Shown here in pieces: positions 11,055 through 30,731 of a DNA stretch of 49,967 bases (its first letter is position 1; the number at the start of each line of letters is the position of its first letter). Under the pieces are notes generated by a model that did no database searches, was not told the DNA's origin, and was given only the letters and a program-made list of their open reading frames with translations. The position numbers were made by a program, and so were the translations under genes. The stretch lies in NCBI GenBank assembly GCA_002269645.1, contig NIVC01003199.1, forward strand, positions 1 through 49,967, in the 5' to 3' direction. This DNA is from Macrostomum lignano. Lineage: Eukaryota.

Positions 11055-11430
11055 TTTCTGTAGTCTATGTATGGCCAGGCCTAAGTGGGGAATATATACA
11101 TTTCTGTAGTCTTTGGCCAGGCCCAAGTGGGAAATAAATACATTTCTGTAGTCTATGGCCAGGCCGAAGCGGGGAATAAATACATTTCTGTAGTCTTTGG
11201 CCAGGCCTAAGTGGGGAATAAATACGTTTCTGTAGTCTATGGCCAGGCCGAAGTGGGAAATAAATACATTTCTGTAGTCTATGGCCAGACCCAAGTGGGG
11301 AATAAATACATTTCTGTAGTCTATGGCCAGGCCCAAGTGGGGAATAAATAAATTTCTGTAGTCTATGGCCAGGCCGAAGTGGGGAATAAATACATTTCTG
11401 TAGTCTATGGCCAGGCCCAAGTGGGGAATA
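11055..11430 (+). repeat. 42-bp minisatellite, ~9 copies
   Basis: Unit TTTCTGTAGTCTATGGCCAGGCCCAAGTGGGGAATAAATACA; produces spurious 14-aa periodic ORFs. Confidence 0.95.
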
Positions 11431-12037
11431 AATATAAATATAATTCTCCACATTCTAGTAGACTAGTTTTGTAAGCTACTAAAAAAGCTATAATTGCATA
11501 TTAAATAGTAAATTTTTGTTTAACTTAACGGTTCAAACAGTTGATAATAAAGATTATATAAATTGATTATAGCATATTAGAATGGCTGACGAACTTATAG
11601 ACTGTGATGACTGACTAGCCATAGGAAAAAGTAACGCAAAACGGCTAGATTTTTTGTTTTCAAAAACTAAGAAAAAAGCAAATGGTTTATGAGACAGCTG
11701 TGATTTAATTAAAAACGCACACACAGCAATAAATTTATGATGCACACACATGGTAACTAAGCAAGCTGCAGAGGAACACAACAAAAGACACAAAAAGCAA
11801 ACGAAAAGCAAGGCATAATTACAATACGCAGTTCAATTGTTATTATATATATATTAGTAAACAGTTCTTATAAAACAAAGATGTTGTAGTAACTTCAATC
11901 AACTCCCATATTGCAACAATTTCAATCACAGGGCAATATTATTATTATTATTATTCTTAAAGGGATTAATTTTGATATAATAACAAACACTAAGCTTGAA
12001 ACGATGGAAGTGCAAGATACGAGCTGTTCCCAGTCAC

Positions 12038-15000
12038 TCAAATATCGCTCTCGTGATGCTTATTGCCCTTCTTCCTATTGTCTATGGTTGACATGCTGAA
12101 ATCGTTCACATTGTCGTCAAGAATTTTGTCCTCCTTGCTGAAGCCCGTCTGCTGGTAGATGATGTCATTTAGTAGCTGAAATGAAAAACAATGCGACAAT
12201 AAAACCAAGGTCAGTTTCTTCAGTTGTGACACTTGCGGATGAAGAAAATAGAAATGATTTTTTTGTTCTGTAGAGTCTATGGCCAGAACTCTCCTTTCTA
12301 GCTTTGATCTGCTGTCTATGGCCAGAACTCTCCTTTCTAGCTTTGATCTGCTGTCTATGGCCAGAACTCTCCTTTCTAGCTCTGATCTGCTGTCTATGGC
12401 CAGAACTCTCCTTTCTAGCTTTGATCTGCTGTCTATGGCCAGAAATCTCCTTTCTAGCTTTGATCTGCTGTCTATGGCCATAACTTTTATTTCTAGCTTT
12501 GATATGCTGTCTATGGCCAGAACTTTCATTTCCAGCTTTGATATGCTGTCTATGGCCAGAACTTTCATTTCCAGCTTTGATCTGCTGTCTATGGCCAGAA
12601 CTTTCATTTCTAGCTTTGATATGCTGTCTATGGCCAGAACTTTCATTTCTAGCTTTGATCTGCTGTCTATGGCCAGAACTTTCATTTTCAGCTTCGATAT
12701 GCTGTCTATGGCCAGAACTTTCATTTCTAGCTTTGATATGCTGTCTATGGCCATAACTTTTATTTCTAGCTTTGATCTGCTGTCTATGGCCAGAACTTTC
12801 ATTTCTAGCTTTGATCTGCTGTCTATGGCCAAAACAGACAGACATTTAATCTTAGAATTTGATAGCAATAAATATGCTCAATAGATAGAAGCTGACGAGG
12901 CTGTTAAAAATGGCTATAAAGCGAGTGACCAATCAAATCTAGATCATAAAAAGCTATTAATACTACTTACATCGTCATCTTCGCCCTCCTCGGATACGAT
13001 TAGATTGCGTCTAGCGGCAGCTTTCGACTCGGTCTTGCGCACTGATGGCATTGGAGCTCCATTTAGCTGGTGGAGGTTGTCGATTTGGTGGCATTGATTA
13101 AATAAGCTTGGATCTATTAATAGTAGCACTTTCTATATATCAGTGTCTTTCGATCCATCTCACCCCTGTATCTCAGAGTCTAATCTCACCCCCTGTATCT
13201 TAGAGTCTATATCTCACCCATGTATCTCAGAGTCTATATCTCACCCATGTATCTCAGAGTCTATATCTCACCCCTGTATCTCAGAGTCTATATCTCACCC
13301 CTGTATCTCAGTCTATATCTCTCCCCCTGTATCTCAGAGTCTATATCTCACCCCTGTATCTCAGAGTCTATATCTCGCCCCTGTATCTCAGAGTCTATAT
13401 CTCACCCCTGTATCTCAGAGTCTATATCTCTCCCCCTGTATCTCAGAGTCTATATCTCGCCCCTGTATCTCAGAGTCTATATCTCACCCCTGTATCTCAG
13501 AGTCTATATCTCACTCCCTGTATCCCACAGTTTTTATCTCACCCCTGTATCTCAAAGTCTATATCTAACCCTGAGTCTCCCTGTAACTCAGGGGTCTCCC
13601 TGTATCTCAGGGGTCTCCCTGTATCTCAGGGGTCTCCCTGTATCTCAGGGGTCTCCCTGTATCTCAGGGGTCTCCCTGTATCTCAGGGGTCTCCCTGTAT
13701 CATTCCCCCCTCAACCCCCATGGCCCAGTCCTGTATCGCTCACAGATTTCTCTCGCCGCTCAGTCCCGGCAGCGCCAGCGGGCTCAATCTCATCAGTTGG
13801 ATGCTCATCATAGCATGGCGGTCCGTGCGATCCGTGAGTCTCCACCACTTTGCTAGTGACAACCTGGCGCACCTGTTTCCGTTTGACAATTCGTTTAGTG
13901 ACCTTGTTGCCATGCTCATCCGTGTAGGTTTCCACCTCTTCGACTGGGTCGCCGACTTGTTCGCTCTGTTAAATACAAATTCAGAAAGATGAAAGTCTGT
14001 GACTACTAGCAGTAGGGAAAATGCTAAATATGTTTAAAAAAAAACGGAAAAGCTACTAACATTAATCAAATGATAGAACAGAACTACAGATCGACATATA
14101 GGTACAAAATTAATATAAACATGCTATACGAATACTTACATATAAATAATAAAAGAAAATATAAACAGAGCCATGCACAAAAAACTGCAAAAACGCAAGA
14201 AATCGCTTAAGAATCATTTTATAATCGATAAAAACGGCAGACGACCACACAGGAAGGTTGTAAGCCAGGGATCGGCAAACTCCGGCTCTCGGGTCCTTCG
14301 ATCAACTTCGCAATAGCAATTCAGTCAGCTTAAGGTTTGTGTCTCTTTTCGCCTCCTTCTCTTTTCTCTTTTCTTATAATATGAGATATTCGACATATCG
14401 GCACTTTGCTTAACACATCTCTGCATTACTGCATCATTTTCTCTCCTCCCTCTGTCTTTTCTCCTCTTTCCCTTCTCCCCTATCTCCTCTCTTCTCCTTC
14501 CTCTCTCCCGTCTTTTCTCTTTTCCTTCTGTCTTCTCTCCTCTCTCCCTTTTTCTCCCCTTTCCTCTCTCCCCTCTTCTCTCCTCCCCCTGTCTTCTCTC
14601 CTCTCTTCTTTTTCCTCTCTCCCTTCTCCTCTCCTCCCCCCTGTCTTCTCTCCTCTCTTCTTTTTCCTCTCTCCCTTCTCCTCTCCTCCCCCTGTCTTCT
14701 CTCCTCTCTTCTTTTTCCTCTCTCCCTTCTCCTCTCCTCCCCCTGTCTTCTCTCCTCTCTCCCTTTTTCTCCCCTTTCCTCTCTCCCCTCTTCTCTCCTC
14801 CCCCTGTCTTCTCTCCTCTCTTCTTTTTCCTCTCTCCCTTCTCCTCTCCTCCCCCCTGTCTTCTCTCCTCTCTTCTTTTTCCTCTCTCCCTTCTCCTCTC
14901 CTCTCCCTGTCTTCTCTCCTCTCTTCTTTTTCCTCTCTCCCTTCTCCTCTCCTCCCCCCTGTCTTCTCTCCTCTCTTCTTTTTCCTCTCTCCCCTCTCCT

Positions 15001-18000
15001 CTCCTCCCCCCTGTCTTCTCTCCTCTCTTCTTTTTCCTCTCTCCCCTCTCCTCTCCTCCCCCCTGTCTTCTCTCCTCTCTTCTTTTTCCTCTCTCCCCTC
15101 TCCTCTCCTCCCCCCTGTCTTCTCTCCTCTCTTCTTTTTCCTCTCTCCCCTCTCCTCCCCTCCCCCCTGTCTTCTCTCCTCTCTTCTTTTTCCTCTCTCC
15201 CCTCTCCTCTCCTCCCCCCTGTCTTCTCTCCTCTCTTCTTTTTCCTCTCTCCCCTCTCCTCTCCTCCCCCTGTCTTCTCTCCTCTCTTCTTTTTCCTCTC
15301 TCCCTTCTCCTCTCCTCCCCCTGTCTTCTCTCCTCTCTTCTTTTTCCTCTCTCCCCTCTCCTCTCCTCCCCCTGTCTTCTCTCCTCTCTTCTTTTTCCTC
15401 TCTCCCCTCTCCTCTCCTCCCCCTGTCTTCTCTCCTCTCTTCTTTTTCCTCTCTCTCCATTCCTCTCCTCCCCCTGTCTTCTCTCCTCTCTTCTTTTTCC
15501 TCTCTCCCCTCTCCTCTCCTCCCCCTGTCTTCTCTCCTCTCTTCTTTTTCCTCTCTCCCCTCTCCTCTCCCCCCTGTCTTCTCTCCTCTCTTCTTTTTCC
15601 TCTCTCCCCTCTCCTCTCCTCCCCCTGTCTTCTCTCCTCTCTTCTTTTTCCTCTCTCCCCTCTCCTCTCCTCCCCCTGTCTTCTCTCCTCTCTTCTTTTT
15701 CCTCTCTCCCCTCTCCTTTCGCTTCTCCCTCCCCTATTATCTCCTCACATCCTCCATCTTTTCTCTCATCCTACCTGCGTATCGCTTCTGCCCACCCCTC
15801 TCTCCTCTTATCTACTATTCCCTCTCCTTATCAGTCTAATCTGGCCCGCGGCCATGAGCTGGATTCTTTACTATCTAGCCATTGGCTTAAGGTAAAAAAG
15901 TTTGCAGACCCACTTGCTATAAACAATGATACGTGCATCAAGCAAGGTAAACTACAGGAGGGTAATAGAGGTACAATTAGTAGGCTAGGAAGCTAATAAA
16001 CCGGCTCTAATCCAGATACGCAAGCAGCTAGCAAAGGATTACTTGAGTGACAAAGGTTCGCTCTTTCGGATCGCCCTGGAAATGATGATGATGCTTCGGA
16101 TAGCCCTGATGCTCGCAGCCTCCTCCGTCGCCTGCGGCACCGGCCTCGGCCATCTCCATCATGGCCATGGACTTGGAGATATTGTCATCGGAGTAGTCCG
16201 CAGGCTTTTATTGGAAAAAAATAAGTACGCATTGAACTTTTCAAGTGATAAAATTTTATTAGGGGACATTTGAAGGTCACGGATACAAACAAGACAATGT
16301 ACTGTTGATCAGACAGTCGCTATAAACTCTCTCACCTCCGTTCGGTGCTCGTGAACGGCAGTTCCACCACCGCCGCCATTGTAGCCGCCGTGCAATTGGC
16401 CGGCGTGAATCTGCTGCTTGTTCTCACGGATGACGTCATATTTGTGATCAACAGACGGCAGGTTGGAGTTCTGCGTTGCGTGATTGGTTGAGATTATTTT
16501 AGAGACAAGTGAAGCGAAGAATTTCAACAATTATATATTGCAGTTACAGCTTATCACCACCCAGCTTACCCTCTTTGTGAGGCTTTCCTGAAGCATTCTA
16601 GGATCAACGTAGGTAAATCCTTTGGACTTGCGCTGCAATGCAATTTGTGACGGGTGATGATTAGGGATCTGTGTAGATTGCTTAGGGATCTGTGCAGATT
16701 GCTTAGGGATCTGTGTAGATTGCTTAGGGATCTGTGTAGATTGCTTAGGGATCTGTGTAGATTGCTTAGGGATCTGTGTAGATTGCTTAGGGATCTGTGC
16801 AGATTGCTTAGGGATCTGAGTAGATTGCTTAGGGATCTGTGTAGATTGCTTAGGGATCTGTGTAGATTGCTTAGGGATCTGTGTAGATTGCTTTGGGATC
16901 TGTGTAGATTGCTTAGGGATCTGTGTAGATTGCTAAGGGATCTGAGTAGATTGCTTAGGGATCTGTGTAGATTGCTTAGGGATCTGTGTAGATTGCTTTG
17001 GGATCTGTGTAGATTGCTTTGGGATCTGTGTAGATTTCTTAGTGATCTGTGTAGGGGACCACTAAAAAGGGATCTGTGGGGATCACTAATAAGGGATCTG
17101 TGGGGATCACTAAAAAGGGATCTGTGGGGATCACTAACAAGGGATCTGTGGGGATCACTAAAAAGGGATCTGTGGGGATCACTAAAAAGGGATCTGTGGG
17201 GATCACTAACAAGGGATCTGTGGGGATCACTAATAAGGGATCTGTGGGGACCACAAAAAAGGGATCTGTGGGGATCACTAAAAAGGGATCTGTGGGGATC
17301 ACTAATAAGGGATCTGTGGGGACCACAAAAAAGGGATCTGTGGGGATCACTAATAAGGGATCTGTGGGGATCACTAAAAAGGGATCTGTGGGGACCACTA
17401 AAAAGGGATCTGTGGGGATCACTAAAAAGGGATCTGTGGGGATCACTAATAAGGGATCTGTGGGGATCACTAATAAGGGATCTGTGGGGATCACTAACAA
17501 GGGATCTGTGGGGATCACTAATAAGGGATCTGTGGGGACCACTAACAAGGGATCTGTGGGGACCACTAAAAAGGGATCTGTGGGGATCTTAAAAGATCTG
17601 ATGGGGATTTTTATGATCCCAACCAGTTTTTTAGGATTGACTTCAATTTTGAAGGGATTTTTGGGAACTATTATAGATAGGAATAATTTCAAGATTTAGG
17701 GCTAAGTTTAAAGAATGATACACAATAGAAATCAGCACTCACGTCCATAACTCCGGTCTTTCCGCTTCGCCGTACGGAATCCTCGCTAGCCAGACACACT
17801 GGAGTCCACTCGTCGCCAGGAGGATATTTGAAGGGCGTCTGGCCGAGATTGACAAACAGAGTCTGGTCCCGCATGCTCACTGTGGGATAGAATGCCTCCT
17901 GGCTGAGCACTTGGCTGGGCAGCTGGTAGGCGGGGCCCATCAGGGCGCTGTTGCGAGCGAACTGCATCTGGCCGTGGTCCAGATCTAAGAAGCAGCCAAC

Positions 18001-21000
18001 AACGTCGCCTTTGCCAAACGGTTCGCCATAGCTGTCAATCTCGTCTGAGTGCATCTTTTTGCCTTGATTGCCGGCCAGCCCGAAGCCGTCGGGATCGGCG
18101 CCGTAGCCCCAGCCGGCGGCGTCTCGGCCGATGTCCAGGCCGCCCGACTCGGTGGTCCAGCCGGCTCTGGACAGGCCGCGGGCCTCCTGCGGCTCCACCT
18201 CGTAGTAGAACCGGCCGCCAGCCCGACCGCGGAGACCTTTGTTGGCGCGGACGCCCTGGTTGGTGTTGACGGTTGGATGACTGATTTATGCTTGATTGAT
18301 GACTGGTTGATGACGATTGACAAGAGGTTGATGATGGTTGATGATGGCTGATGATGATTGATGATGATTGTTGATGGTCAATGATGATTGATGATAGCTA
18401 ATGGTGTTTGGTGATGATTGATGACGGTTGATAATAGATTTACAGTGAGAGCTGATAGATAACTGATTGCTAGTTGACTATAGATGCCGGCTGATGCAAA
18501 TGCACAACAGTTGCAACTCCCGCGCCCACCTGCCAGCCGAAGCCCAGCTGACTCTGCGCAGAGGCACCGTCGGGTCCCAGCGTCAGTCCGGGGCCGCTGG
18601 TGTCGTGCTGATTCAGCCGCCAGGCGCGCGGATTCTCGGCCTGTTGATTGGCCGGCGCCAAACCGACGGGCCGCCAGACGCCGGCCGGCCGGTACAGCAG
18701 CGGCCTGGCCGGATCGTCGCCGAAGTTCCAGTGGGCGGCGGCGCCGGGGGCGAGGCAGGCGGCCGGGTAGAACACCTCACGGCGCATGTCGTGCGGCAAT
18801 TCGTAGGCGAGGCCCAACTCTTTGCCATTGACTGAGTACAGCACAGAGCCGCCGTCTAAGTCGACGAAAACTCCGACAACGTCGCCGCTGGCTAGACGAT
18901 CGCCGTAGGCCTCGGCGACGCCGCGGTTGTACTTTTCGCCGTTGGCCCCGTAGCCGAAACCGTGGGCGTCGTCGCCTAGGCGCAGACTGGCGGAGCTGGT
19001 CGACCAGCCAACTCTGGCTGGCACAGGCTGATCGCCGGCAGGTGTTGCCATGGTAACCGTGGCTTCGTAGTACCACTGGCCGCCGTTGCAAACTCCGCGA
19101 TCGGTACGGCAGCCCTGGGATAGGAATGCGTCATTGTTGATAAATGCAGTTTTTAATACCATTGACTCTATCAAATTAAAGTACACGTGTGACTAAAGTA
19201 CAAATGTGCCAGTTCTAGAGTACAGATGTATTAGTTTAAAAGTTTTTTATTACAGGGTCGCCACACACACCCTCAATTACCCTAGCTAAAACCTGATACC
19301 CATTTTGCAGCTGGGTGAACTGAAGCAATGCAGAGTTACGAGTAAGTGTCTTGCTTAAGGACACGAGTTGTTCCAAGTAGGTTGATAATCGAATCCCCGA
19401 CTTTTCAGTGGTAAGCCCGACACTAAACTACTAGGCTGAAATCCCTCAAAACACACACTAGTACACATGTACTAGTTCAAAAAGTACACATGTACTAGTT
19501 CAAAAAGTACACATGCACTAGTTCAAAAAGTACACATGTACTAGTTCAAAAAGTACACATGCACTAATTCAAAAAGTACACATGTACTTGTTCAAAAAGT
19601 ACACATGTACTAGTTCAAAAAGTACACATGTACTAGTTCAAAAAGTACACATGTACTAGTTCAAAAAGTACACATGTACTAGCTCAAAAAGCACATTTAA
19701 ATAGTGAACACAGCAGAGCTTATAGCTGATGGAAAATTAAAGCAGCTCACCTGCCAATCAGGCGCCCCGACGGGACAGGCGCCAACTGATCGGCCAGAGT
19801 CCAGACTGGCTGACAGCATTGGCTCAGCGTCGGCCGGAGACATGTGCCAACGGGACGGCCGTTCAACCACCAGCTCAGGTCGACGGTCCATCTGATCGCG
19901 TTGCTGCTGCTGCTGCATTTGCATCTGTTGCTGGCGCCACAAGGTGACGTCGCTAATAGTGCCGTCCCCGGCGCCGCCGTAGATGTTGCCGCGAGATCCG
20001 TTGGCAGCGGCGGCTCGCAGCTCGCGATTGTAGGCGTCCTCTGAGGAATTTGAATTCAATGTTACAAGGATTTGCAATTTGGAATGAAATTGAAGCCTGC
20101 AGCATTGAGACTTAATTTTGAAGGATTTTATACCTGAGAAGGGTTTTGGATTAGGGATTTGGGGAGGATTATGGATAAGAAAATTATGGAGTTGAATAGG
20201 ATTAGGGACTTGAGGAGGATTAGGGATTTGAGAACTAGGGATTTTAAAAGGATTGGGGATTTAAAGACTACGGATTTAAATAGGATTAGGGATTTGAGGA
20301 AGATTAGGGATTTGAGGACGACTAGGGATTTGAATAGGATTAAGGATTTGAGGAGGAGGATTAGGGATTTAAAGACTACGGATTTGAATAGGATTAGGGA
20401 TCTGGGGAGGACTAGGGATTTAAAAAGGATTACGGATTCGAAGATAATTAGAGATTTGAAGTCAACTACAGAATTATACTGAAGTATAAGGACAGTCAGA
20501 GAAATTGAGATTCAATACCAAGGATTTTGAATTTGAAGGATTTTGGATTTGAAGGGGCTCAGGGTTCGGGATTCTTAACTGGGATTCGAATTGCATAATA
20601 TTTGAATCACACCTTTCTGTCTGAAGCTCTTGCGCATATCGCTAGTAACGGGCATCTCCTGATAGTTGCCGTAGGTCTGATCGTTGAGCTGGTCGCGAGT
20701 CGGCCCAGTGTAATTCCATTTGTTCTTGAATGTGCCAGGAATCAGCGGCTTGGACGGCTTCTCCGGCGATTTGAGTCTGCGCGGGTTGAGCCATAGTAAC
20801 GGATTAGGCGAGCTTTAGATTGTGCAGAGATGAATACGGTAGGGAATTAACAATGACTATAGGGAGAGGCCGATGGGACGGCTCAGAGGGAAATAACAGC
20901 TTGGATAATCCAGGCATTAATCCAGTAGATATTATTGATTATCTAAGGGTTAATCCAGTAGGGATTATCGATAAAGGATTATTGATTATTGAAGAATTAA

Positions 21001-24000
21001 CCAGTAGAGATTATCTATAATCCAAGATTATTGATTATCTAAGGATTAATCCGGTAGAGATTATCGATAATCCAACGATTATTGATTATCTAAGGATTAA
21101 TTCAGTAGAGATGATCTATATTTAAGGATTATTGATTATTCAATAAAGATTATTGATTATCCAGTAAAGATTACCGATAATCCAAGGATTATTGATTATT
21201 GAAGGATTAATCCAGTAGAGATTATCTATAATCCAAGGATTATTGCTAGTCTAAGGATTAATCCAGTAAAGATTATTGATAATCCGGAAGCGAACGTCAA
21301 TAATCCAAGGATTAACTAAGCAAGGATTAGCCATAATCCAGGGATAAGCACTTCGGGGATGAAAAAAAGTCTTGAACTTCAAGCAAAGCAAAGCGTTAAA
21401 CCAAAGCTCTCAAAGTTATTCCTCACCGGAAGAAGCCGTGATGCTCAACCACAGCCCGCCACAACCGCTTGGCCAGCTTAGCCGAGGCGCACTTGAACTC
21501 AACCACAGTCTCAGCTTTCGAGTCGCGCTCCGACTCAGTCCTGATGCCAATCTTGAGCGTATTCCGCTTATAGGACACTTTGAGAATCTTTGGCCAAGAG
21601 TAGCGACCAATCCGCAGGCTGTTGCGGTACACCAGCACGCCCGAATGATACACGCCAACAAAGACCTCCTCGCCCATGCTGTCCTTGGCCTCGTGCATGT
21701 CCAATCCGTACATAGCCAGCTTCTTGGCATTCTGCAAGAAATGCATATCGGCCTCCTCTGGCGTCATGCCCTGGTGAGTTTTGTGCAACTCGCTGACTCG
21801 TTCCATGAGTTCGCGATGACTGCGGAATTCCTCCGGACAGAATGGACAGTCCTGCAGGTACAGCAGGCTGGTCATCTTCTCGTCGCTTGGCTCGAAATCG
21901 CCGATCTCGGATTGGACAACGTAGCTGCCCAAGATGATGTAGGTGATGAAGGAGCAGGGCAAGGCGTCGGCCATGAGATTCTGGCGAATCTGGAGAGCCA
22001 TGTAGTAGCGGGTGAGATTCTCGCGGAGATTCTCCGGATCGGGCGGATAGAACTTCACCATGAAGTCCAGCTTCCATTCGTTCTCTGCGGATTTTTAGGG
22101 GGGGGGGTGGGTGTCGAGCTGCCTGTTTTGCTGCGGTTAATTAAAGTGCTCTTTGTACTCTAATTTCCCTTTTCTACATCAGAAGCGTCCAGAGTGACAG
22201 TGGCGTGACAATCACGTGACGGTATCGTGGCAATCACGTGACGGTATCGTGACAATCACGTGACAGTATCGTGGCAATCACGTGACAGTATCGTGGCAAT
22301 CACGTGACGGTATTGTGACAATCACGTGACGGTATTGTGACAATCACGTGACAGTGTCGTGACAATCACGTGACAGTGTCGTCGTAATCACGTGACAGTA
22401 TCGTGACAATTATGTGACAGTATCGTGACAATATCGTGACAATCACGTGACAGTATCGTGACAATCACGTGACAGTATTGTGACAAAAAACACGTGATGG
22501 GAGTCAGGATACAAGCTATTTTTACACAATCACTTGACAGACACAAACAACCTGGAAAATTGTATTTTATAGGAAATACGGTACTCTAAGATAACGAAAA
22601 ATATGTTGATAATGCCATAACTATTGATAGAACGGATTTCCAGGCACGCCAAGGAAACTCTCAATAGTAAATACCAAGCAACAATACTGAGATAAAAGTA
22701 CAGCGCTAGGTTCTATAGTATTAGCGGGCAGGCAGACAGACAGACAGATCCCAGACAGGGAGATCGGGGGAGAAATGTACAGAGCAGAGAAGAGGGATAG
22801 AAAAGATCAATGTGGGTTTGGTGGCTCAGCGCGCATCGCATCTGACAGTCCACTCACACTGCTCAAACTTCTTATATAAAAATGTGAGCAATAGGAAATA
22901 CTGTTAGTACGTATGCATCATAATCATTTTTTCTAAAATCTAAATCCCTAAGGGAGATTCCGCTAGGCGCAGAATTGAACCCACCTACCCGACTAAGCCT
23001 TCTACTTAAACTGTGTGTTCCCCCAAAAATGGCAGCCTTAAAAATATCCCTCTTGCATCTGGGGGAGTGAGGGAAACAGAAGGGCTGGGGGATGGGAGGG
23101 GAGACGCGTTAAGGCAGCTCTCTGACTCAGCCAGTGGTGGTTGAGCTGTGCAGAGAAACGTAGAATGCTGTCGATGATTGTGCAGGCAAACCCAATTCAT
23201 CTCCTCATCTGACTGTCCCGACAGACTCCGATAATGCCTTAAACATAGCAATAGTGATCCTCAAGTGTGACCATGATGTGACCGTCAATTTGACTTGCGA
23301 AAGATGAAAATACTGTCATTGTGACCCTTGTGTGTTATTCCAGTCACATTTGACGGTCACATTTGAGGGCCACATGAGTGACCATTTGTTTGGCGGTCAC
23401 ATTTGAGGGCCACATGAGTGACCATTTGTTTGACGGTCACATCGCAGGGTCACATGAGCGACCATTTGTTTGGCGGTCACATTTGAGGGCCACATGAGTG
23501 ACCATTTGTTTGACGGTCACATCGCAGGGTCACATGAGTGACCATTTGTTTGACGGTCACATTTGAGGGCCACATGAGTGACCATTTGTTTGACGGTCAC
23601 ATTTGAGGGCCACATGAGTGACCATTTGTTTGACGGTCACATTTGAGGGCCACATGAGTGACCATTTGTTTGACGGTCACATTTGAGGGCCACATGAGTG
23701 ACCATTTGTTTGACGGTCACATAAGCGACCGTTAATTTGACGGTTACATCCAAGCGTCACAATAAAGGGTCACATGCAATTTGCTTTGTTTTAACTGTCA
23801 TCAAAACGGTCACATAGTCAAAATGTGACCGGTCCCAGTTTTATACAGGACAGAAAGCCGAAAACAGTGAAAGCGAAAGTCGAAATGAGGTCGAATGGGA
23901 AGATGCAAAAGCCCCCCTTCCCCTAATTCCTATAGAACGCCAGACGGGCCTGTTAAGATCTCTTAACAACCCCCTCTAGTTGATGGCTACCAGAGTCGGG

Positions 24001-27000
24001 CAGGCAGACAGGCAGGCCGCATGTGTCAGGGTGTGTGGAGTGGAGCCGATTGGAGAGGAGGGTAGGGTAAGGGTGTAGAAAATAGCTGCACATATTGTGA
24101 AGGGGAGAGAAAAGGGAGTATATACATACATACATACATACATATATATCCCTTATGATATATAAGCCATAGTCCGCCCAGCATAACCTATAGGCTGGCT
24201 ACAAGATCTGCTGACTGCCAATGCACAAAGCATTCCTTTTAACAAATGGCAACAAATGCTTTTTTAGTCTGCAGTAGTATCCTAACCACAACTGTATTCA
24301 TCATATATATATAAGCCATATATATGGTATAGTAAAAATAGATTTACACATCTTAGTATAGGTGTTGAATAGATACTAACACGGGTCTAACCTTTGCTAA
24401 AAAAGATATATTTACTTCCTAAAATTAGCATCTAGTCAGCAGACTCCATGCGTACATTATATAGATTACTAAAACTAAAATACGAACTAGCTCAGCTTTC
24501 AAGGACTACTGTGATTTATTATTAGAGACAGGGAGCTGTGTGCACCCATGGCGCACTTTAAGCGACATTGTCAACACAACCGGTAAGAGGCAGTCATTCC
24601 ACGGACTCCCTGAGCAGGCAGCACACAAGCACACAGTGGTGTACAGCGGCCCCAACTTTATTTATCGTCAGCCATGTACACTTCACTGCGCCTTAGTGGG
24701 TTGGGTTGGCTCTTAAAGGCGCAAATAAACAAATAAACAAACAGCAAACACTTACTGCCAATCTGCTTGCCAAGTTTCTTCTCGCCGTTAAGCCAGTACT
24801 GTAATAAAAATAATAAGTATACAATAGAATTAATTTTGACACTTAAAATGATAAAAAAACCAACAAGTTCAACATCTTACAGTACAATAAGTAAAGTAAT
24901 TGGATTTGAGAGTTGTAGTTGCACTATCAAAGAGCATGACCTCAAGGCTTAGAGGGGTATAGAGAGAGAGGGAGATGCTTTTACAGGCATGCAATAAATC
25001 ACATGGCAACCGAGAATAGGAAAGAGGAGAGGGGAGAGGCAGAAAGAGCACAGTCGCATTATGATTCAGTCTGTTTGATTCCCTCCACATTAGCGATAAG
25101 CCAGTTCACAGTGAAGACATATGCATCAATTTTATTTGACAATACTTACAAATATATTGTTTGAGTCGCGATAGCACAAGCCGAAGTACTCTTTCTCGTG
25201 TAGGCCCAGCGTGATGCAGGTCTCGTCGAATAGTTCTTGAGCCTTGGCGTTGGTCTGAAATTGGATTAATAGTAATATAGTGCTCAATGGCTCACTGTTT
25301 AGGGACCTGAGTTGGGGCTCAGGATCTCACTGAGGGACCTGAGTTGGGGCTCAGGATCTCACTGAGGGACACCTGAGTTGGGGCTCAGGATCTCACTGAG
25401 GGACACCTGAGTTGAGGTTCAGGATCTCACTGAGGGACCTGAGTTGGGGCTCAGGAAATCACTGAGGGACACCTGAGTTGGGGTTCAGGATTTCACTGAG
25501 GGACCGCTGAGTTGGGGTTCAGGATCTCACTGAGGGACCTGAGTTGGGGCTCAGGATCTCACTGAGGGACCTGAGTTGGGGCTCAGGATCTCACTGAGGG
25601 ACACCTGAGTTGGGGCTCAGGATCTCACTGAGGGACACCTGAGTTGAGGTTCAGGATCTCACTGAGGGACCTGAGTTGGGGCTCAGGAAATCACTGAGGG
25701 ACACCTGAGTTGGGGTTCAGGATTTCACTGAGGGACCGCTGAGTTGGGGTTCAGGATCTCACTGAGGGACCTGAGTTGGGGCTCAGGATCTCACTGAGGG
25801 ACCTGAGTTGGGGCTCAGGATCTCACTGAGGGACACCTGAGTTGGGGCTCAGGATCTCACTGAGGGACCTGAGTTGGGGCTCAGGATCTCACTGAGGGAC
25901 CTGAGTTGGGGCTCAGGATCTCACTGAGGGACCTGAGTTGGGGCTCAGGATCTCACTGAAGACACCTGAGTTGAGGTTCAGGATCTCACTGAGGGACCTG
26001 AGTTGGGGCTCAGGATCTCACTGAGGGATCTGAGTTGAGGTTCAGGATCTCACTGAGGGACCTGAGCTGGGGCTCAGGATCTCACTGAGGGACCTGAGTT
26101 GGGGCTCAGGATCTCACTGAGGGATCTGAGTTGGGGCTCAGGATCTCACTGAGGGATCTGAGTTGAGGTTCAGGATCTCACTGAGAGACTTGAGTTGAGG
26201 TTCAGGATCTCACTGAGGGACACCTGAGTTGGGGCTCAGGATCTCACTGAGGGATCTGACTTGAGGTTAGGATCTCACTGAGGGATCTGAGTTGAGGTTC
26301 AGGATCTCACTGAGAGACTTGAGTTGAGGTTCAGGATCTCACTGAGGGATCTGAGTTGGGGTTCAGGATCTCACTGAGAGACTTGAGTTGAGGTTCAGGA
26401 TCTCACTGAGGGATCTGAGTTGAGGTTCAGGATCTCACTGAGAGACTTGAGTTGAGGTTCAGGATCTCACTGAGGGATCTGAGTTGAGGTTCAGGATCTC
26501 ACTGAGAGACTTGAGTTGAGGTTCAGGATCTCACTGAGGGATATGAGTTGAGGTTCTCTCTCTCACTGAGGGATCCTAGTTGAGGTTCAGGATCTCACTG
26601 AGGGATATGAGTTGAGGTTCAGGATCTCATTGAGGGATATGAGTTGAGGTTCAGGATCTCATTGAGGGATATGAGTTGAGGTTCAGGATTTCACTGAAGT
26701 GTATGCAATACAACAAAAGTACATTCAGTTTAAAAATGTAAAACTTCAACCACCAGAGACAGTAGAGATACTAGAAAACGGAGAAAACCCTCCAAAATAC
26801 AAATTTTATCAATATATCAAAGGGCTAAAGCAGAGAGCTAGAACAGACAGATAGTGGAGAAGAGGACTGCAGAAGAGAGATTATTATGCGGGATCTAAGG
26901 CACGAGGGAAAAATCCAATTTACTAGATAGGACCGAGCGAAGCCTGGGTCAGAGACTGTAAAAATGGAGAAGCTCCACTGTCTGTACTACAGGCTGCCTC

Positions 27001-30000
27001 TCCCGCCCAAGCGTAGCCATCATACTGTCAGGGGGAGAGGGTCAAACTAATTCCCAAAATGAACTGTGAGCCAGTCTGAGTCAGTCTTAGCGGAACTCAA
27101 AGGGAAGAAAATTTATAAGAATAATATTTCGGAGTTTGCAGGTTTTTGTGCAATTTCTTTAAAGTACATTGACATGATCTATATTGAAATCTAATGATTT
27201 TTTGCAAAAACTTGGTTTCTTATATACGATAATTATTCTGCAATCTAGTACGCCATGATCCTGCAATCTAGTATGCCATAATCCTGCAATCTAGTATGCC
27301 ATAATCCCTGCAATCTAGTATGCCATAATCCCTGAAATCTAGTATGCCATAATCCCTGCAATCTAGTATGCCGTGATCCTGCAATCTAGTATGCCATGAT
27401 TCAGATTCTGCAATCTAGTATGCCATGATTCAGATTCTGCAATCTAGTATGCCATGAGTCTGCAATCTAGTATGCCATGAGTCTGCAATCTAGTATGCCA
27501 TAATCCTGCAATCTAGTATGCCATGATTCTGCAATCTAGTATGCCATAATCCTGCAATCTAGTATGCCATGATCCTGCAATCTAGTATGCCATGATTCTG
27601 CAATCTAGTATGCCATGATCCTGCAATCTAGTATGCCATAATCCCTGCAATCTAGTATGCCGTGATCCTGCAATCTAGTATGCCATAATCCTGCAATCTA
27701 GTATGCCATGATCCTGCAATCTAGTATGCCGTGATCCTGCAATCTAGTATGCCATAATCCTGCAATCTAGTATGCCATGATTCTGCAATCTAGTATGCCA
27801 TGATCCTGCAATCTAGTATGCCATAATCTCTGCAATCTAGTATGCCGTGATCCTGCAATCTAGTATGCCATGAGTCTGCAATATAGTATGCCATAATCCT
27901 GCAATCTAGTATGCCATGATCCTGCAATCTAGTATGCCATGATCCTGCAATCTAGTATGCCATAATCCTGCAATCTAGTATGCCATGATTCTGCAATCTA
28001 GTATGCCATGATTCTGCAATCTAGTATGCCATGATCCTGCAATCTAGTATGCCATGATTCAGATTCTGCAATCTAGTATGCCATGATCCTGCAATCTAGT
28101 ATGCCATAATCCTGCAATCTAGTGTGCCATGATTCTGCAATCTAGTATGCCATGTTTCAGATTCTGCAATCTAGTATGCCATGATTCAGATTCTGCAATC
28201 TAGTATGCCATGATTCAGATTCTGCAATCTAGTATGCCATGATCCTGCAATCTAGTATGCCATAATCCTGCAATCTAGTATGCCATGATCCTGCAATCTA
28301 GTATGCCATGATTCAAATTCTGCAATCTAGTATGCCATGATCCTGCAATCTAGTATGCCATGATTCTGCAATGCAGCCCTTTAAAATATTAAGCATTTAA
28401 AGTGGCCAATTAAATTCGGGACGCCAAACGGTCTGATAGCTGGTGCTTAATTTAGCCATTTGAAAATCATAAAACATGAGGGGCCATCTCTTCTCTTAAT
28501 CACTAAACAAATAGCAGTGCAGTGCGGTAAGGGAGGGAGCTTTTAAAATGCTTGTTAGCAGCAACAGCAAGTATAGTTGTGCCCTCACTATGATGCCTCA
28601 GTGTATTTAGTGGATTAGCCTAATAGTAGAATAGAAGTGATGAATGACTGATGCAGGATTGGATTTCAAATGCAGCCCAGTTGCCTGCGTAAATTAACTT
28701 TCGGGTTACAAAAAATAAGCTTTAAATATCAGCTTAGTAGCTTCAGTTCCCGCTACCAATGCTAACTTCTCTTTAGCAATAAAGGTCGAAGTCCCATCCA
28801 GATTCTTATCGGGTATTGCTTTCTTCATTTCTTGATATATATTGGCATCCCCAATGAGATGAATTCTCATATTTAGGATTTGAATTTTCAGTTTAGATCT
28901 AGATCTGAATTATTATAGTTTAAGAACAGAATTCTTATTGATAATTAAGATCTGATTCTAAATTATAGTTGAAGTCGGAATTATCATTGTTGTGGTCTGA
29001 ATTCTCCCAGTAAGGATCTGAATTCTCACAGTAAGGATCTGAATTCTTACAGTAAGGATCTGAATTCTCACAGTAAGGATCTGAATTCTTACAGTAAGGA
29101 TCTGAATTCTCCCAGTAAGGATCTGAATTCTCCCAGTAAGGATCTGAATTCTCACAGTAAGGATCTGAATTCTTACAGTAAGGATCTGAATTCTTACAGT
29201 AAGGATCTGAATTCTTACAGTAAGGATCTGAATTCTCACAGTAAGGATCTGAATTCTCACAGTAAGGATCGGAATTCTCATAGTAAGGATCTGAATTCTC
29301 ACAGTAAGGATCTGAATTCTCACAGTAAGGATCTGAATTCTCATAGTTGAGATATGAATTTGCATATTTGAGATCTGAATTCTCATTGTTGAAATTTAAA
29401 TTCTCATAGTTAAGACCTGAATTCTCACAGTTTTTTAATTTAAATTCTTATAGTTGAGATCTAAATTCCCACAGTTGAGATCTAAATTCTCATAGTTAAG
29501 ACCTGAATTCTTTTAGTTGAGACCTGAATTCTCTTAGTTGAGACCTGAATTCTCACAGCTTACTAAACCCGAATTCTTATAGTTGAGATCTGAATTTTCA
29601 TAGTTAAGACCTGAATTCTCATAATTAAGACCTGAATTCTCATAGTTAAGACCTGAATTCTCTTAGTTAAGACCTGAATTCTCATAGTTGAGACCTGAAT
29701 TCTCTTAGTTGAGACCTGAATTCTCACAGCTTACTAAGACCCGAATTCTCATAGTTGATATCTAAATTCTCATAGTTAAGACCTGAATTCTCATTATTGA
29801 GATCTGAATTCTTATCTTTTGAGATCTAAATTTGTATCATAAGAATATTGATTTTCATCATTACAGTTGGAATTAGGAATTCTTACCAACCCAGAGAGAA
29901 ATCCCCATACTGATTATCCCCAAATACAATACTATAAATATGCCATAGGATATAATGAAAAGCTCACATCAACATCAAACGAGTGCACAGATCCATCCAG

Positions 30001-30345
30001 CATAACAACTTGGCAGGGCCGCAGTTTCCCAGCCGGTGTATTCTGTTTACTAGGCGGCAGAGAAGAGCCGGGTGTGCCAATAATGCCGCCAGCCGAAGCG
30101 GAGCCATGCCGAGCCATTGTGCCGCTAATCTGTGGCGAAGCGGCGGCGGCCTGATGCAGTGACATGCCTTTGTCGCGCAGAGTGTAATAATCCTTCTTAG
30201 ACATTGTATTAGCTTCGCTGTAGTCCATTGGCAAGGTGGCGCTCTGTTGGGCAGCCAGTGGTTGCGACTGCTGGTGCTGGTACTGGCGACTGTTATCTAG
30301 GCTAGCCAGGTTCATGCTGCCCTGGGTGGTTTCCCCGTCTGACAT
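12038..30345 (-). CDS. Band 4.1/coracle-like FERM-FA protein fused to two DDX1-type SPRY domains; 14 exons (30345-29968, 25254-25150, 24798-24756, 22084-21427, 20776-20613, 20040-19751, 19114-18530, 18255-17743, 16632-16570, 16470-16336, 16204-16043, 13965-13744, 13066-12971, 12175-12038), ~1183 aa
   Basis: All junctions are GT-AG and phase-consistent (exon sum 3552 nt). FERM motifs: CQVVMLDGS, KEYFGL, YWLNGEKKL, FMVKFYPPDP, MYGLDMH, WPKILKVSYKR, KRLWRAVVEHHGFFR. The last four to six small exons are less certain. Confidence 0.8.
12275..12830 (+). repeat. 39-bp minisatellite, ~14 copies (FERM gene intron 13)
   Basis: Unit TGTCTATGGCCAGAACTTTCATTTCTAGCTTTGATCTGC; gives 13-aa periodic ORFs. Confidence 0.95.
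13158..13700 (+). repeat. 27-bp minisatellite (13158-13568) followed by related 19-bp minisatellite (13575-13700)
   Basis: Units ATCTCACCCCTGTATCTCAGAGTCTAT and TCTCCCTGTATCTCAGGGG share CCCTGTATCTCAG. Confidence 0.9.
14440..15720 (+). repeat. ~51-bp polypyrimidine minisatellite (~1.3 kb)
   Basis: Unit CCTGTCTTCTCTCCTCTCTTCTTTTTCCTCTCTCCCCTCTCCTCTCCTCCC; almost only C/T with about one G per unit (TGTC at 15271 and 15322). Confidence 0.95.
16662..17590 (+). repeat. 21-bp minisatellite (16662-17040) switching to a 24-bp minisatellite (17045-17590)
   Basis: TTAGGGATCTGTGTAGATTGC and AAGGGATCTGTGGGGATCACTAAA; shared core AGGGATCTGTG. Confidence 0.95.
17743..18255 (-). CDS. SPRY domain 2 exon (DDX1-type SPRY)
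   Basis: GVRANKG...FYYEV...RAGWTT...IGRD...GKKMH...YGEPFGKGDVVGCFLDLDHG...FYPTV...NLGQTPFKYPP. Acceptor ACCAG|GGC, donor GAC|GTGAGT. Confidence 0.9.
18275..18470 (+). repeat. Degenerate (GAT)n/(TGATTGA) low-complexity tract in the intron between the SPRY exons
   Basis: gatgattgatgatgattgttgatgg... run. Confidence 0.75.
18530..19114 (-). CDS. SPRY domain 1 exon (DDX1/hnRNP-U-type SPRY)
   Basis: GCRTDRGV...WYYEATV...RVGWST...LGDDAHGFGYG...GDVVGVFVDLD...NGKELGLAY...FYPA...NFG. Acceptor CCCAG|GGC, donor CAG|GTGGGC. Confidence 0.9.
19255..19445 (-). mobile_element. Second, more diverged and 3'-truncated copy of the tRNA-derived SINE
   Basis: GGGTCGCCACACACACCCTCAATTACC...CAGCTGGGTGAACTGAAGCAAT... 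matches 9903-10088. Confidence 0.85.
19460..19695 (+). repeat. 23-bp minisatellite, ~10 copies
   Basis: Unit AGTACACATGTACTAGTTCAAAA containing the inverted repeat AGTAC-ACAT-GTACT. Confidence 0.95.
20150..20480 (+). repeat. Degenerate GGATTAGGGATTT(G/A)A repeat
   Basis: Recurring AGGATTAGGGATTT units of variable length. Confidence 0.8.
20900..21310 (+). repeat. Degenerate ~50-bp AT-rich repeat
   Basis: Recurring GATTATTGATTAT...AAGGATTAATCCAGTAGAGATTATC...ATAATCCAAG. Confidence 0.8.
21427..22084 (-). CDS. FERM central and C-lobe exon
   Basis: ORF 21423-22061, with classic band 4.1 motifs (TRYYMALQIRQNL, LGSYVVQSEIGDF, FLQNAKKLAMYG, GVYHSGVLVYRN). Confidence 0.95.
22204..22497 (+). repeat. 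22-bp minisatellite, ~12 copies, each with a TCACGTGA palindrome
   Basis: Unit TCGTGACAATCACGTGACAGTA; AATCACG at 22210 and 22232. Confidence 0.9.
23352..23720 (+). repeat. 40-bp minisatellite, ~9 copies
   Basis: Unit GACGGTCACATTTGAGGGCCACATGAGTGACCATTTGTTT; CGGTCAC at 23354 and 23394. Confidence 0.95.
25300..26698 (+). repeat. 32-34-bp minisatellite, ~43 copies
   Basis: Unit GAGGGACCTGAGTTGGGGCTCAGGATCTCACT, with internal inverted repeat CCTGAG/CTCAGG. Confidence 0.95.
27238..28372 (+). repeat. 23-bp minisatellite (24- and 29-bp variants), ~47 copies
   Basis: Unit CTGCAATCTAGTATGCCATGATC. Confidence 0.95.
28995..29810 (+). repeat. 21-bp minisatellite, homogeneous left half and diverged right half
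   Basis: Unit TCTGAATTCTCACAGTAAGGA; gives the spurious (VRIQILT)n ORF. Confidence 0.95.
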
Positions 30346-30731
30346 GCCGCCGTGATCTGTGTCATCCTGAGCGATGGTGGTAAGGCAATCATAGAATTAT
30401 AGTTCTGAGTTCTGATTCTAAGCTACTTCACGATATGTTAACACCCAGCTGATTAAATGAGTCTATCATGCAATTCATTAGAACTAAAGCTTAAAAAAGA
30501 TTATTGAAGATTGGCAACTACATTAGAAAAAAGGGAGATTAGCCAAAGAAGTTGAATTAATATTAAGAGTTTGGAATGGATCAAATTTTTTGGGATTGGA
30601 ATTCTAATTTTACTATAATCTTAGGATTTGATTTTTTAATAGAAAAATTATACATAAACCTGACCCTAAGTTATTTAGGTATTTAACAGTTAGTATAAAA
30701 ATTGATTCATAACAATTATACATAAAAAGTA

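What the first reader, a model, noticed from the sequence alone, without database searches (positions are those of the whole stretch)
12038..30345. Unusual domain fusion: band 4.1-type FERM-FA followed by two DDX1-type SPRY domains
Seen: phase-consistent splicing runs FERM (…HHGFF R|LKSPEKP…WNYTGPTRDQL, FA-like) through a Q-rich linker into W-H-M-S-P-A-D…PDWQ|GCRT, matching the DDX1 SPRY start (WQMNPYDR…EWHGCRAT), and then a second SPRY. Known: protein 4.1/coracle have FERM-FA followed by SAB/CTD regions, and DDX1's SPRY sits inside a DEAD-box helicase. I know of no characterised FERM+SPRY protein. Inference: a lineage-specific membrane-cortex adaptor that may recruit DDX1-SPRY partners (e.g. 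RNA-processing complexes) to junctions.
Basis: partly seen in the sequence, partly recalled or inferred. Interest (0 to 1): 0.7.

Follow-up and report, generated by a model that had tools for sequence, protein, structure and literature searches.

The report
Flatworm protein 4.1 with two SPRY domains
This is a real 13-exon gene of the flatworm Macrostomum lignano encoding a protein-4.1-type membrane-skeleton adaptor with two DDX1-like SPRY domains inserted in its middle, an architecture found across flatworms, already in databases, and apparently never studied.

Summary
On the minus strand, 13 GT-AG exons (30366..12038) splice in frame. They reproduce the deposited Macrostomum lignano protein PAA52686.1 (1137 aa) exactly. 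The protein has FERM_N/M/C lobes, 50% identical to annelid protein 4.1. It then has a degenerate FA region, a Q-rich linker and two SPRY domains, each with the DDX1-type N-terminal extension.

The best solved-structure match is the human DDX1 SPRY domain (4XW3), by sequence (E 1e-33) and by fold (TM 0.84-0.86).

So this looks like a 4.1/coracle-type gene with an inserted SPRY pair.

The fusion is not a gene-model artefact. Intron-free 3.5-4.4 kb run assemblies carry the whole ORF. In Schistosoma japonicum the FA-like sequence lies in the same exon as the SPRY gene's annotated start.

The architecture occurs in trematodes, cestodes, a monogenean and Macrostomum, and in no other phylum among the top matches. 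Several orthologues are mislabelled "DDX1". No paper describing it was found.

A role as a membrane-cortex adaptor is inferred. Recruitment of DDX1 partners is untested.

The parts
29968..30366 (-). Exon 1. N-terminal region with the conserved SKKDYYTLR motif and the start of FERM_N. The first in-exon ATG is at 30345. The deposited model adds one Met from an upstream exon that was not located.
   Evidence: FERM_N at residues 121-182
25150..25254 (-). Exon 2, FERM_N lobe (TNAKAQELFDETC...YRDSNNIF)
   Evidence: Pfam FERM_N E 2.9e-9 on this exon alone
24756..24798 (-). Exon 3, a 43-nt micro-exon at the end of FERM_N (YWLNGEKKLGKQIG)
21427..22084 (-). Exon 4, FERM_M and FERM_C lobes, ending ...VVEHHGFFR
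   Evidence: Pfam FERM_M 8e-22 and FERM_C 1.8e-20; 50% identity to Capitella protein 4.1
20613..20776 (-). Exon 5, degenerate FA (FERM-adjacent) region: RLKSPEKPSKPLIPGTFKNKWNYTGPTRDQ...
   Evidence: No Pfam FA hit. BLASTP alignment to 4.1 runs through SKFRYSGRTQ. hhalign 93.5%, E 2.3e-7 over 44 columns.
19751..20040 (-). Exon 6, Q-rich linker plus the N-terminal extension of SPRY1 (RWHMSPADAEP...APDWQ)
   Evidence: aligns to DDX1 KWQMNPYD...EWHGCRA
18530..19114 (-). Exon 7 (phase 0/0), SPRY1 core plus the N-terminal extension of SPRY2 (RAWRLNQHD...FGWQ)
   Evidence: Pfam SPRY 1.6e-20; BLASTP to avian DDX1 36% identity, E 3e-24
17743..18255 (-). Exon 8 (phase 0/0), SPRY2 core
   Evidence: Pfam SPRY 2.7e-17; phmmer to PDB 4XW3 (DDX1 SPRY) E 1.2e-33; Foldseek TM 0.84-0.86
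16570..16632 (-). Exon 9, the short conserved post-SPRY motif RKSKGFTYVDPRML. Parasitic flatworms carry a related (K/R)GWSY-x-(D/E)P version.
   Evidence: Absent from the paralogues P0002 and P0003, so possibly a cassette exon.
16336..16470 (-). Exon 10, tail (NSNLPSVDHKYDVIRENK...)
13744..13965 (-). Exon 11, tail with the family-conserved motif VETYTDEHGNKVTKRIVKRK
12971..13066 (-). Exon 12, tail, ending in the acidic run SEEGEDDD that begins the CTD-like block
12038..12175 (-). Exon 13, the CTD-like block LLNDIIYQQTGFSKEDKIL, the C-terminus ...HESDI and the stop codon
   Evidence: hhalign to the 4.1 CTD: 85%, E 6e-6 and 78%, E 1.8e-5, with a reversed control at 0.2%

Best explanation
The region is one protein-coding gene of Macrostomum lignano (PAA52686.1, BOX15_Mlig018785g1). 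It encodes a flatworm-specific form of the protein 4.1/coracle family.

Shown:
- Thirteen exons splice in frame into FERM (N, M, C lobes), a degenerate FA region, a Q-rich linker, SPRY1, SPRY2 and a roughly 230-residue tail.
- The same order of parts is conserved in trematodes, cestodes, a monogenean and Macrostomum.
- Both SPRYs are closest to the SPRY insert of the RNA helicase DDX1.

Probable: the end of the tail is a remnant of the 4.1 C-terminal domain. If so, the SPRY pair was inserted into the variable middle of an ancestral 4.1 gene. The insertion and the SPRY duplication would predate the split of Macrostomorpha from the parasitic flatworms.

Inferred mechanism: like other 4.1 proteins, the FERM domain docks on the cytoplasmic tails of membrane proteins and on phosphoinositides at the cell cortex, and the C-terminal remnant adds a second binding site. 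The two SPRY beta-sandwiches are protein-binding modules. They give this adaptor extra binding surfaces that 4.1 proteins of other animals lack. Their partners are unknown.
For: Gene structure:
- Four consecutive in-frame GT-AG junctions join FERM to SPRY2.
- All 13 exons reproduce the deposited protein exactly.

Domains:
- Pfam finds FERM_N, FERM_M, FERM_C and two SPRYs.
- The FERM plus the first half of FA is 50% identical to Capitella protein 4.1 over 315 residues, E 8e-102.
- All top non-flatworm FERM hits are protein 4.1/coracle.
- FA-like region: hhalign 93.5%, E 2.3e-7.
- CTD remnant: hhalign 85% and 78%, with a reversed control at 0.2%.

Continuity of the message:
- Run-assembly contigs of 3.5 kb from two independent runs carry the whole 1088-residue FERM-SPRY-SPRY ORF of a close relative, with no intron.
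- Contigs of 3975 and 4380 nt carry 1105- and 1144-residue orthologues.
- In S. japonicum the FERM exons lie upstream on the same strand. The FA-like sequence RLRGSTRPKKPSLFPSFATRKYHYPG is in frame in the same exon as the annotated Met of the SPRY protein.
- The intron position GWQ|GCR is shared by Macrostomum and Schistosoma.

Distribution:
- An exhaustive profile search of 1.84 billion representatives put about ten FERM+SPRY clusters on top; every one that carries a source name is a flatworm. Scores then drop to FERM-only 4.1 proteins.

SPRY affinity:
- The nearest relatives outside the family are all DDX1.
- PDB 4XW3 matches at E 1.2e-33.
- SPRY1 matches avian DDX1 at 36% identity, E 3e-24.
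- The AlphaFold model has pLDDT 83, and 4XW3 is its top Foldseek hit at TM 0.84-0.86.
- SPRY2 orthologues form one clade across flatworms, with 91% bootstrap support.
Against: - No transcript of this exact gene copy was seen here. The run-assembly contigs are from a paralogue or congener (63% identity) and from parasitic species.
- The Pfam FA and 4_1_CTD models do not hit any family member, even at E 10. FA and CTD homology rests on profile-profile scores of moderate strength over short blocks.
- The neighbour-joining tree does not resolve whether the SPRYs branch from within or beside DDX1; deep nodes have bootstrap below 40.
- Whether flatworms also keep a SPRY-less 4.1 gene was not tested, so 'orthologue' versus 'paralogue' of 4.1 stays open.
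- Planarians were not identified among the hits.
- Nothing here bears on localisation, partners or phenotype; the mechanism is inference from family knowledge.
Confidence: 0.8

Rival explanations
1. Gene-model artefact. A FERM gene and a neighbouring SPRY gene on the same strand were fused by prediction or by read-through, and the cell makes two separate proteins.
For: Several database models carry only one half: S. japonicum P0122 and Paragonimus P0174 are SPRY-only, and P0172 is FERM-only. M. lignano is known to trans-splice, which could in principle yield a separate downstream message (own knowledge).
Against: All junctions are in phase, with no stop over 1137 codons. Single uninterrupted ORFs sit on intron-free contigs in three lineages. 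The S. japonicum 'SPRY-only' model is visibly truncated, because its first exon continues upstream in frame into FA-like sequence with the FERM exons before it. Full-length models exist in Echinostoma, Dicrocoelium, Cichlidogyrus, Sparganum and Mesocestoides.
Confidence: 0.04
2. The SPRY exons are alternative cassette exons. The main product would be a conventional 4.1 protein without SPRYs, and the FERM-SPRY form a minor or tissue-specific isoform.
For: Exons 7 to 13 are all phase 0/0 and multiples of three, so each can be skipped in frame. Exon 9 is absent from the paralogues P0002 and P0003. 4.1 genes are known for heavy alternative splicing (own knowledge; many isoforms are listed).
Against: Exon 6, which carries the first strands of SPRY1, is 290 nt and cannot be skipped in frame on its own. 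Every full-length model and every intron-free contig found has both SPRYs. No SPRY-less isoform turned up.
Confidence: 0.15
3. The SPRY pair binds the same partners as the DDX1 SPRY and brings RNA-processing complexes, for example the tRNA ligase complex, to the cell cortex or junctions.
For: DDX1 is the closest SPRY relative by sequence and by fold.
Against: Identity is only 33-47%. The flatworm SPRYs form their own clades, separate from flatworm DDX1. The partners of the DDX1 SPRY are themselves not established (own knowledge). No data on binding or localisation exist.
Confidence: 0.1
4. The SPRY pair did not come from DDX1. It would derive from another member of the same SPRY subgroup (hnRNP-U-like, RyR, Ash2L or RanBP9), with the DDX1 resemblance reflecting slow evolution of DDX1.
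For: Deep nodes of the tree are unresolved, with support for a DDX1 clade at only 32-40%. SPRY1's listed PDB matches after DDX1 are RyR and ASH2L.
Against: The hits from E 1e-34 down to about 1e-16 outside the family are DDX1 proteins or fragments; hnRNP-U-like hits start near 1e-11. Both SPRYs share the DDX1-type N-terminal extension W-x-M/L-N/S-P-x-D...W-Q/H-G-C-R.
Confidence: 0.2

Closest known systems
Protein 4.1 / coracle family (EPB41, EPB41L1-3; Drosophila coracle)
   Same: The three-lobed FERM is 50-54% identical. The start of the FA region is recognisable (RLxxPExPxK...KFRYSGRT against RLKSPEKPSK...KWNYTGPT). There is a variable middle, and a probable remnant of the last CTD block (IDHDxALAxAIxEATxMNPDMTV against EDDDLLNDIIYQQTGFSKEDKIL).
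   Different: Two SPRY domains sit between FA and the tail. The Pfam FA and CTD models fail. The second half of FA, which holds the kinase-site region, has diverged. There is no SAB, but among the hits SAB is seen only in vertebrate 4.1 proteins.
SPRY domain of the DEAD-box helicase DDX1 (PDB 4XW3)
   Same: It is the closest relative of both SPRYs by sequence (33-41% for Macrostomum and up to 47% for the parasite orthologues; E 1e-33 and 3e-24) and by predicted fold (TM 0.84-0.86). The shared features include the N-terminal extension strands.
   Different: There are no DEAD or Helicase_C domains. The SPRY is duplicated in tandem and sits in a membrane-skeleton protein. Flatworms keep a normal DDX1 as well (P0129, P0132 and P0151).
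Multi-SPRY proteins such as the ryanodine receptor (three SPRY domains)
   Same: More than one SPRY in a single chain. RyR SPRY domains are the next-best sequence and structure matches.
   Different: They are much more distant (E 1e-13, 16-19% identity in the structural alignment), sit in a different protein context, and are not arranged as an adjacent pair next to a FERM.

Membership tests
Protein 4.1 family | N-terminal three-lobed FERM domain of the 4.1 type | tested here: met
   Pfam FERM_N 2.3e-17, FERM_M 9.3e-21, FERM_C 3.9e-21. 50% identity over 315 residues to Capitella 4.1. All best non-flatworm hits are 4.1/coracle. No formal FERM phylogeny was made.
Protein 4.1 family | FA (FERM-adjacent) region directly after FERM_C | tested here: inconclusive
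   Pfam PF08736 does not hit, even at E 10. The first ~44 columns align by hhalign at 93.5%, E 2.3e-7, and a home-made FA HMM gives E 2.9e-6. The second half is not recognisable.
Protein 4.1 family | C-terminal domain (CTD, PF05902) | tested here: inconclusive
   No Pfam hit. hhalign of flatworm tails against 4.1 CTDs gives 85%, E 6e-6, and 78%, E 1.8e-5 over the last 25-column block. The reversed-sequence control gives 0.2%.
Protein 4.1 family | Spectrin-actin-binding domain (SAB, PF04382) | tested here: not met
   Absent. In one search, PF04382 is listed only for vertebrate hits, so it does not define invertebrate members.
DDX1 (DEAD-box helicase 1) | DEAD and Helicase_C core domains with the SPRY inserted in the first | tested here: not met
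   No PF00270 or PF00271 in P0001-P0004 or in the parasite orthologues. The GenBank name 'DDX1' on P0122, P0171 and P0175 is a mislabel caused by the SPRY similarity.
SPRY domain (PF00622), DDX1-like subgroup | SPRY beta-sandwich with the N-terminal extension W-x-M-x-P-x-D ... W-Q/H-G-C/V-R | tested here: met
   Two Pfam SPRY stretches, combined E 5.4e-38. Residue-level alignments to DDX1 include the extension. The predicted fold matches 4XW3 at TM 0.84-0.86.

The most novel reading that the evidence does not exclude
Flatworms as a phylum may have rebuilt their only 4.1/coracle-type membrane-skeleton adaptor around a tandem SPRY module captured from DDX1. In that case the cortex, the septate junctions or the syncytial tegument of free-living and parasitic flatworms would be organised through SPRY-mediated contacts that no host animal has. 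That would make this a phylum-specific, possibly essential protein and a parasite-selective target. It could also link the cortex to RNA-handling complexes.
Probability: 0.15. Interest if true: 0.7.

Novelty: new variant of a known kind. Interest (0 to 1): 0.45.

Why it matters
FERM-bearing 4.1 proteins are conserved organisers of the membrane skeleton and of junctions. Their middle region is where lineages differ. Here one animal phylum has placed two folded protein-binding domains there and kept them since before the free-living and parasitic lineages sampled here (Macrostomum and the Neodermata) diverged.

This has three consequences. It is a clean, datable example of domain capture into an old scaffold. 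It gives a testable handle on what the poorly understood DDX1-type SPRY binds. It also identifies a protein that is conserved in flukes, tapeworms and monogeneans but was not found with this architecture outside flatworms, hosts included. Macrostomum lignano offers transgenesis and RNAi to study it.

There is a practical point too. Several GenBank entries for this family are mislabelled as DDX1 or split into halves, and they should be corrected.

Tried and rejected
- Pfam scans for FA (PF08736) and 4_1_CTD (PF05902) on the exons, on four full-length proteins and on seven orthologues, at E up to 10, gave no hits. I therefore turned to profile-profile comparison.
- The full-length family profile did not detect the tail in non-flatworm 4.1 proteins; the best domain E-value was 0.11.
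- A neighbour-joining bootstrap tree of SPRY domains was meant to place the pair relative to DDX1. The orthologue groups were well supported, but the deep nodes were unresolved.
- I looked up the S. japonicum DDX1 locus to see whether it lies near the FERM-SPRY gene on the same 87.6-Mb chromosome. Neither isoform is on record.
- Four literature searches found nothing on this architecture or these genes: FERM+SPRY+flatworm; FERM/SPRY with parasite names; 'SPRY domain'+'FERM domain'+4.1; and the Mlig gene identifiers.
- I looked for a SPRY-less isoform among the database copies of the gene. The one model lacking exon 6 (P0328) would be out of frame if spliced that way, so it looks like an older prediction artefact.
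- I considered and rejected the idea that the window is arthropod, which the many simple repeats had suggested. The 100% match is to Macrostomum lignano.


Full report
**What the window is.** The window matches at 100% the deposited protein PAA52686.1, 'hypothetical protein BOX15_Mlig018785g1' of the free-living flatworm Macrostomum lignano. That protein's only contig on record is 49,967 bases long, the length of this window. The gene lies on the minus strand.

**Checking the observation.** Pfam scans of the minus-strand open stretches find four kinds of domain:
- FERM_N at 25135-25326.
- FERM_M and FERM_C at 21426-22094.
- One SPRY at 18470-19186.
- A second SPRY at 17692-18285.

- ...HHGFF-CG|gtgagg to cag|A-CTC (R|LKSPEKP).
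- ...CAGAAAG|gtgtga to cag|AG-GAC.
- ...GATTGGCAG|gtgagc to cag|GGCTGCCGT (PDWQ|GCRT).
- ...GGCTGGCAG|gtgggc to cag|GGCGTCCGC (FGWQ|GVRA).

Joining exons 4 to 8 gives one open frame of 735 codons. A search over donor and acceptor sites then rebuilt residues 2-1137 plus the stop of the deposited protein from 13 exons, all GT-AG, spanning 30366..12038.

**Whether the fusion is real or a prediction artefact.** Four lines of evidence say it is real.
1. Paralogues in the same genome have the same order of parts. Examples are P0003 (Mlig026758g1, 63% identical) and a third group, P0121/P0005/P0006.
2. P0002, an 80%-identical relative of P0003, is encoded as one uninterrupted 3,267-nt ORF. It sits on 3.5-kb contigs assembled independently from two sequencing runs, SRR28338163 and SRR28338164. 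The genomic gene here has 12 introns, so such contigs are best read as transcripts. Intron-free contigs of 3,975 and 4,380 nt likewise carry the 1,105- and 1,144-residue orthologues of Dicrocoelium and a diphyllobothriid tapeworm.
3. Full-length FERM plus two-SPRY models exist in Echinostoma caproni, Dicrocoelium dendriticum, the monogenean Cichlidogyrus casuarinus, Sparganum proliferum, Spirometra and Mesocestoides corti (two paralogues). Partial models exist in Clonorchis, Paragonimus, Schistocephalus and Dibothriocephalus.
4. The Schistosoma japonicum protein P0122 looks at first like a SPRY-only gene and is named 'DDX1'. In its locus, however, FERM_M, FERM_C and FA-like exons lie upstream on the same strand. 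Translating its first exon upstream gives RLRGSTRPKKPSLFPSFATRKYHYPGAT-MNSSSMDG... in one frame without a stop. The annotated start is therefore internal to an exon that begins with the sequence following FERM_C.

The intron between GWQ and GCR in SPRY1 sits at the same position and phase in Schistosoma and Macrostomum.

**What kind of FERM protein it is.** The FERM and the first part of the following region are 50% identical to Capitella teleta protein 4.1 over 315 residues (E 8e-102). Every top non-flatworm hit is a protein 4.1/coracle homologue at about 45-54% identity.

The FA region is only half there. Pfam's FA model does not hit. The segment RLKSPEKPSKPLIPGTFKNKWNYTGPTRDQ does align to RLxxPEPPxK...GSKFRYSGRTQxQ of 4.1 proteins, with hhalign at 93.5%, E 2.3e-7 over 44 columns. 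The second half is not recognisable.

The flatworm proteins share three motifs after SPRY2:
- (K/R)G(W/F)(S/T)Y-x-(D/E)P directly after SPRY2.
- E-x-Y-x-(D/E)-x-x-G-x-x-V-x-K, here VETYTDEHGNKVTKRIVKRK.
- An acidic run followed by a-L-N-x-A-I-x-e-T-x-L-x-p-D-x-x-V, here EDDDLLNDIIYQQTGFSKEDKIL.

The third motif aligns with the last conserved block of the 4.1 C-terminal domain, IDHDxALAEAIxEATxMNPDMTVEK. hhalign gives 85%, E 6e-6 with nine flatworm tails against sixteen CTDs. With larger sets it gives 78%, E 1.8e-5, while a reversed-sequence control scores 0.2%. Pfam's CTD model itself does not hit. I take the CTD remnant as probable, not proven.

In one search the SAB domain (PF04382) appears only in vertebrate hits. 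Invertebrate 4.1 proteins show FERM, FA and CTD with a variable middle. So the SPRY pair sits in that variable middle; it does not replace SAB and CTD.

**What kind of SPRY domains these are.** A search with the SPRY pair alone first returns flatworm family members. After those it returns only DDX1 proteins from animals, algae and protists (E 1e-34 and weaker), before any hnRNP-U-like hit at about 1e-11. Further evidence:
- Against solved structures, the human DDX1 SPRY (4XW3) is far ahead: E 1.2e-33 on SPRY2, against 2e-13 for a ryanodine-receptor SPRY.
- SPRY1 aligns to avian DDX1 at 36% identity over 171 residues (E 3e-24).
- An AlphaFold2 model of the pair, built from a 7-sequence alignment, has mean pLDDT 83 and pTM 0.77.
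- Its best Foldseek match in the PDB is again 4XW3, at E 4.5e-19 and target TM 0.84-0.86, followed by ryanodine receptors.

In a neighbour-joining tree the SPRY2 domains of all flatworms form one clade (91% bootstrap). The SPRY1 domains form two well-supported groups, one for Macrostomum and one for the parasitic species. Flatworm DDX1 SPRYs cluster with each other, not with the FERM protein's SPRYs. The duplication into two SPRYs therefore predates the Macrostomum-Neodermata split. The deep nodes are unresolved, so descent from DDX1 itself is the likeliest reading but is not demonstrated.

**Distribution and novelty.** The exhaustive profile search of 1.84 billion cluster representatives put about ten clusters carrying both parts on top (bit scores 2108 down to 411). 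Scores then fell to FERM-only 4.1 proteins (about 400 and below). Every cluster that carries a source name is a flatworm, and Pfam confirms the architecture.

None has a functional name. Three are called DDX1 and one 'cortical actin cytoskeleton organization'. Four full-text literature searches found no paper on a FERM-SPRY protein or on these gene identifiers.

The architecture is thus already in databases, restricted to Platyhelminthes as far as this search shows, and uncharacterised. I rate it a new variant of a known kind.

**How it most likely works.** What is shown is the anatomy and its conservation. What is inferred comes from established knowledge of 4.1 proteins. The FERM lobes bind the cytoplasmic tails of membrane proteins, membrane-associated guanylate kinases and phosphoinositides at the cortex. 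The C-terminal remnant may keep a second binding site.

SPRY domains are protein-binding beta-sandwiches, so the tandem pair would add two binding surfaces in the middle of the adaptor. The pTM of 0.77 hints that they pack as one unit, but with seven sequences in the alignment that hint is weak.

Identity to DDX1 is 33-47%, and the partners of the DDX1 SPRY are not established (own knowledge).

Exons 7-13 are all phase 0/0 and exon 9 is missing from two paralogues. Isoforms that drop individual tail exons, or even a SPRY core, are therefore possible, although none was seen.

**Limits.**
- No transcript of this exact copy was examined.
- Whether flatworms keep a SPRY-less 4.1 gene was not tested.
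- Planarians were not identified among the hits; one family member, P0123, has no named source.
- FA and CTD homology rest on short profile-profile alignments.

Noticed in passing
window 11047-29812 (introns and 3' flank of the gene): Most of the gene's introns, and the flank just beyond its last exon, hold a long minisatellite array. Periods run from 18 to 51 bp, with up to 47 copies and 0.2-1.4 kb each. Examples are 25301-26697 (32 bp x 43), 27238-28372 (23 bp x 47) and 14441-15717 (CT-rich, 51 bp x 25). These arrays create the long spurious ORFs seen in both strands.
   Followed up: partly
window 40422-41401 and 45619-46750, + strand: Two similar copies of a segment whose ORFs resemble the N-terminal part of calcium-activated chloride channel regulators. 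The Pfam CLCA match is E 2.7e-5, just under the curated cut-off, and is followed by a VWA-like VVVVMDTSGSM motif. This suggests a tandemly duplicated CLCA-like gene upstream of the FERM-SPRY gene.
   Followed up: partly
window 2145-4652 and 5780-6577, + strand: An uninterrupted 835-codon ORF and a 265-codon Cys/His-rich ORF with no Pfam match. They are probably exons of an unannotated or lineage-specific gene.
   Followed up: partly
L003 (S. japonicum CM038289.1, 12.13-12.20 Mb), 2951-10105: The GenBank protein called 'ATP-dependent RNA helicase DDX1' (P0122) has no helicase domains. It is an N-terminally truncated model of the FERM-SPRY gene, and the FERM exons and in-frame FA-like sequence lie just upstream. 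The Clonorchis (GAA30691.2) and Cichlidogyrus (KAL3319268.1) orthologues are likewise misnamed DDX1.
   Followed up: yes
P0001 residues 56-66 (window exon 1) and residues 920-933 (exon 9, 16570-16632): Two short family-specific motifs are conserved from Macrostomum to the parasitic species. (S/P)K(K/R/Q)(D/E)YY-x-(S)LR lies ahead of the FERM and is kept in cestodes, trematodes and the monogenean. The second, RKSKGFTYVDP here and a related (K/R)GWSY-x-(D/E)P version in Schistosoma, the monogenean and diphyllobothriid cestodes, lies right after SPRY2. Neither was seen in the canonical 4.1 proteins inspected.
   Followed up: no
window 12038-12055 (C-terminus): The Macrostomum proteins end in HESDI or HESEI, and the S. 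japonicum protein ends in SESVL. Both fit a class I PDZ-binding motif (S/T-x-hydrophobic). Other orthologues end differently, so this may be lineage-specific or coincidental.
   Followed up: no
window exons 7-13 (19114..12038): All seven downstream exons are in phase 0 at both ends, with lengths 585, 513, 63, 135, 222, 96 and 138. Each internal one (exons 7-12) is individually skippable in frame. The two SPRY units are cut at the equivalent point (GWQ|G), as expected for duplication of an exon unit.
   Followed up: partly
M. lignano assembly (P0326, P0327, P0003, P0331, P0121): The genome holds at least three near-identical copies of this gene (98-99.9% identical, on other contigs) plus two more divergent paralogue groups. 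This fits the known recent genome duplication of this species (own knowledge).
   Followed up: partly
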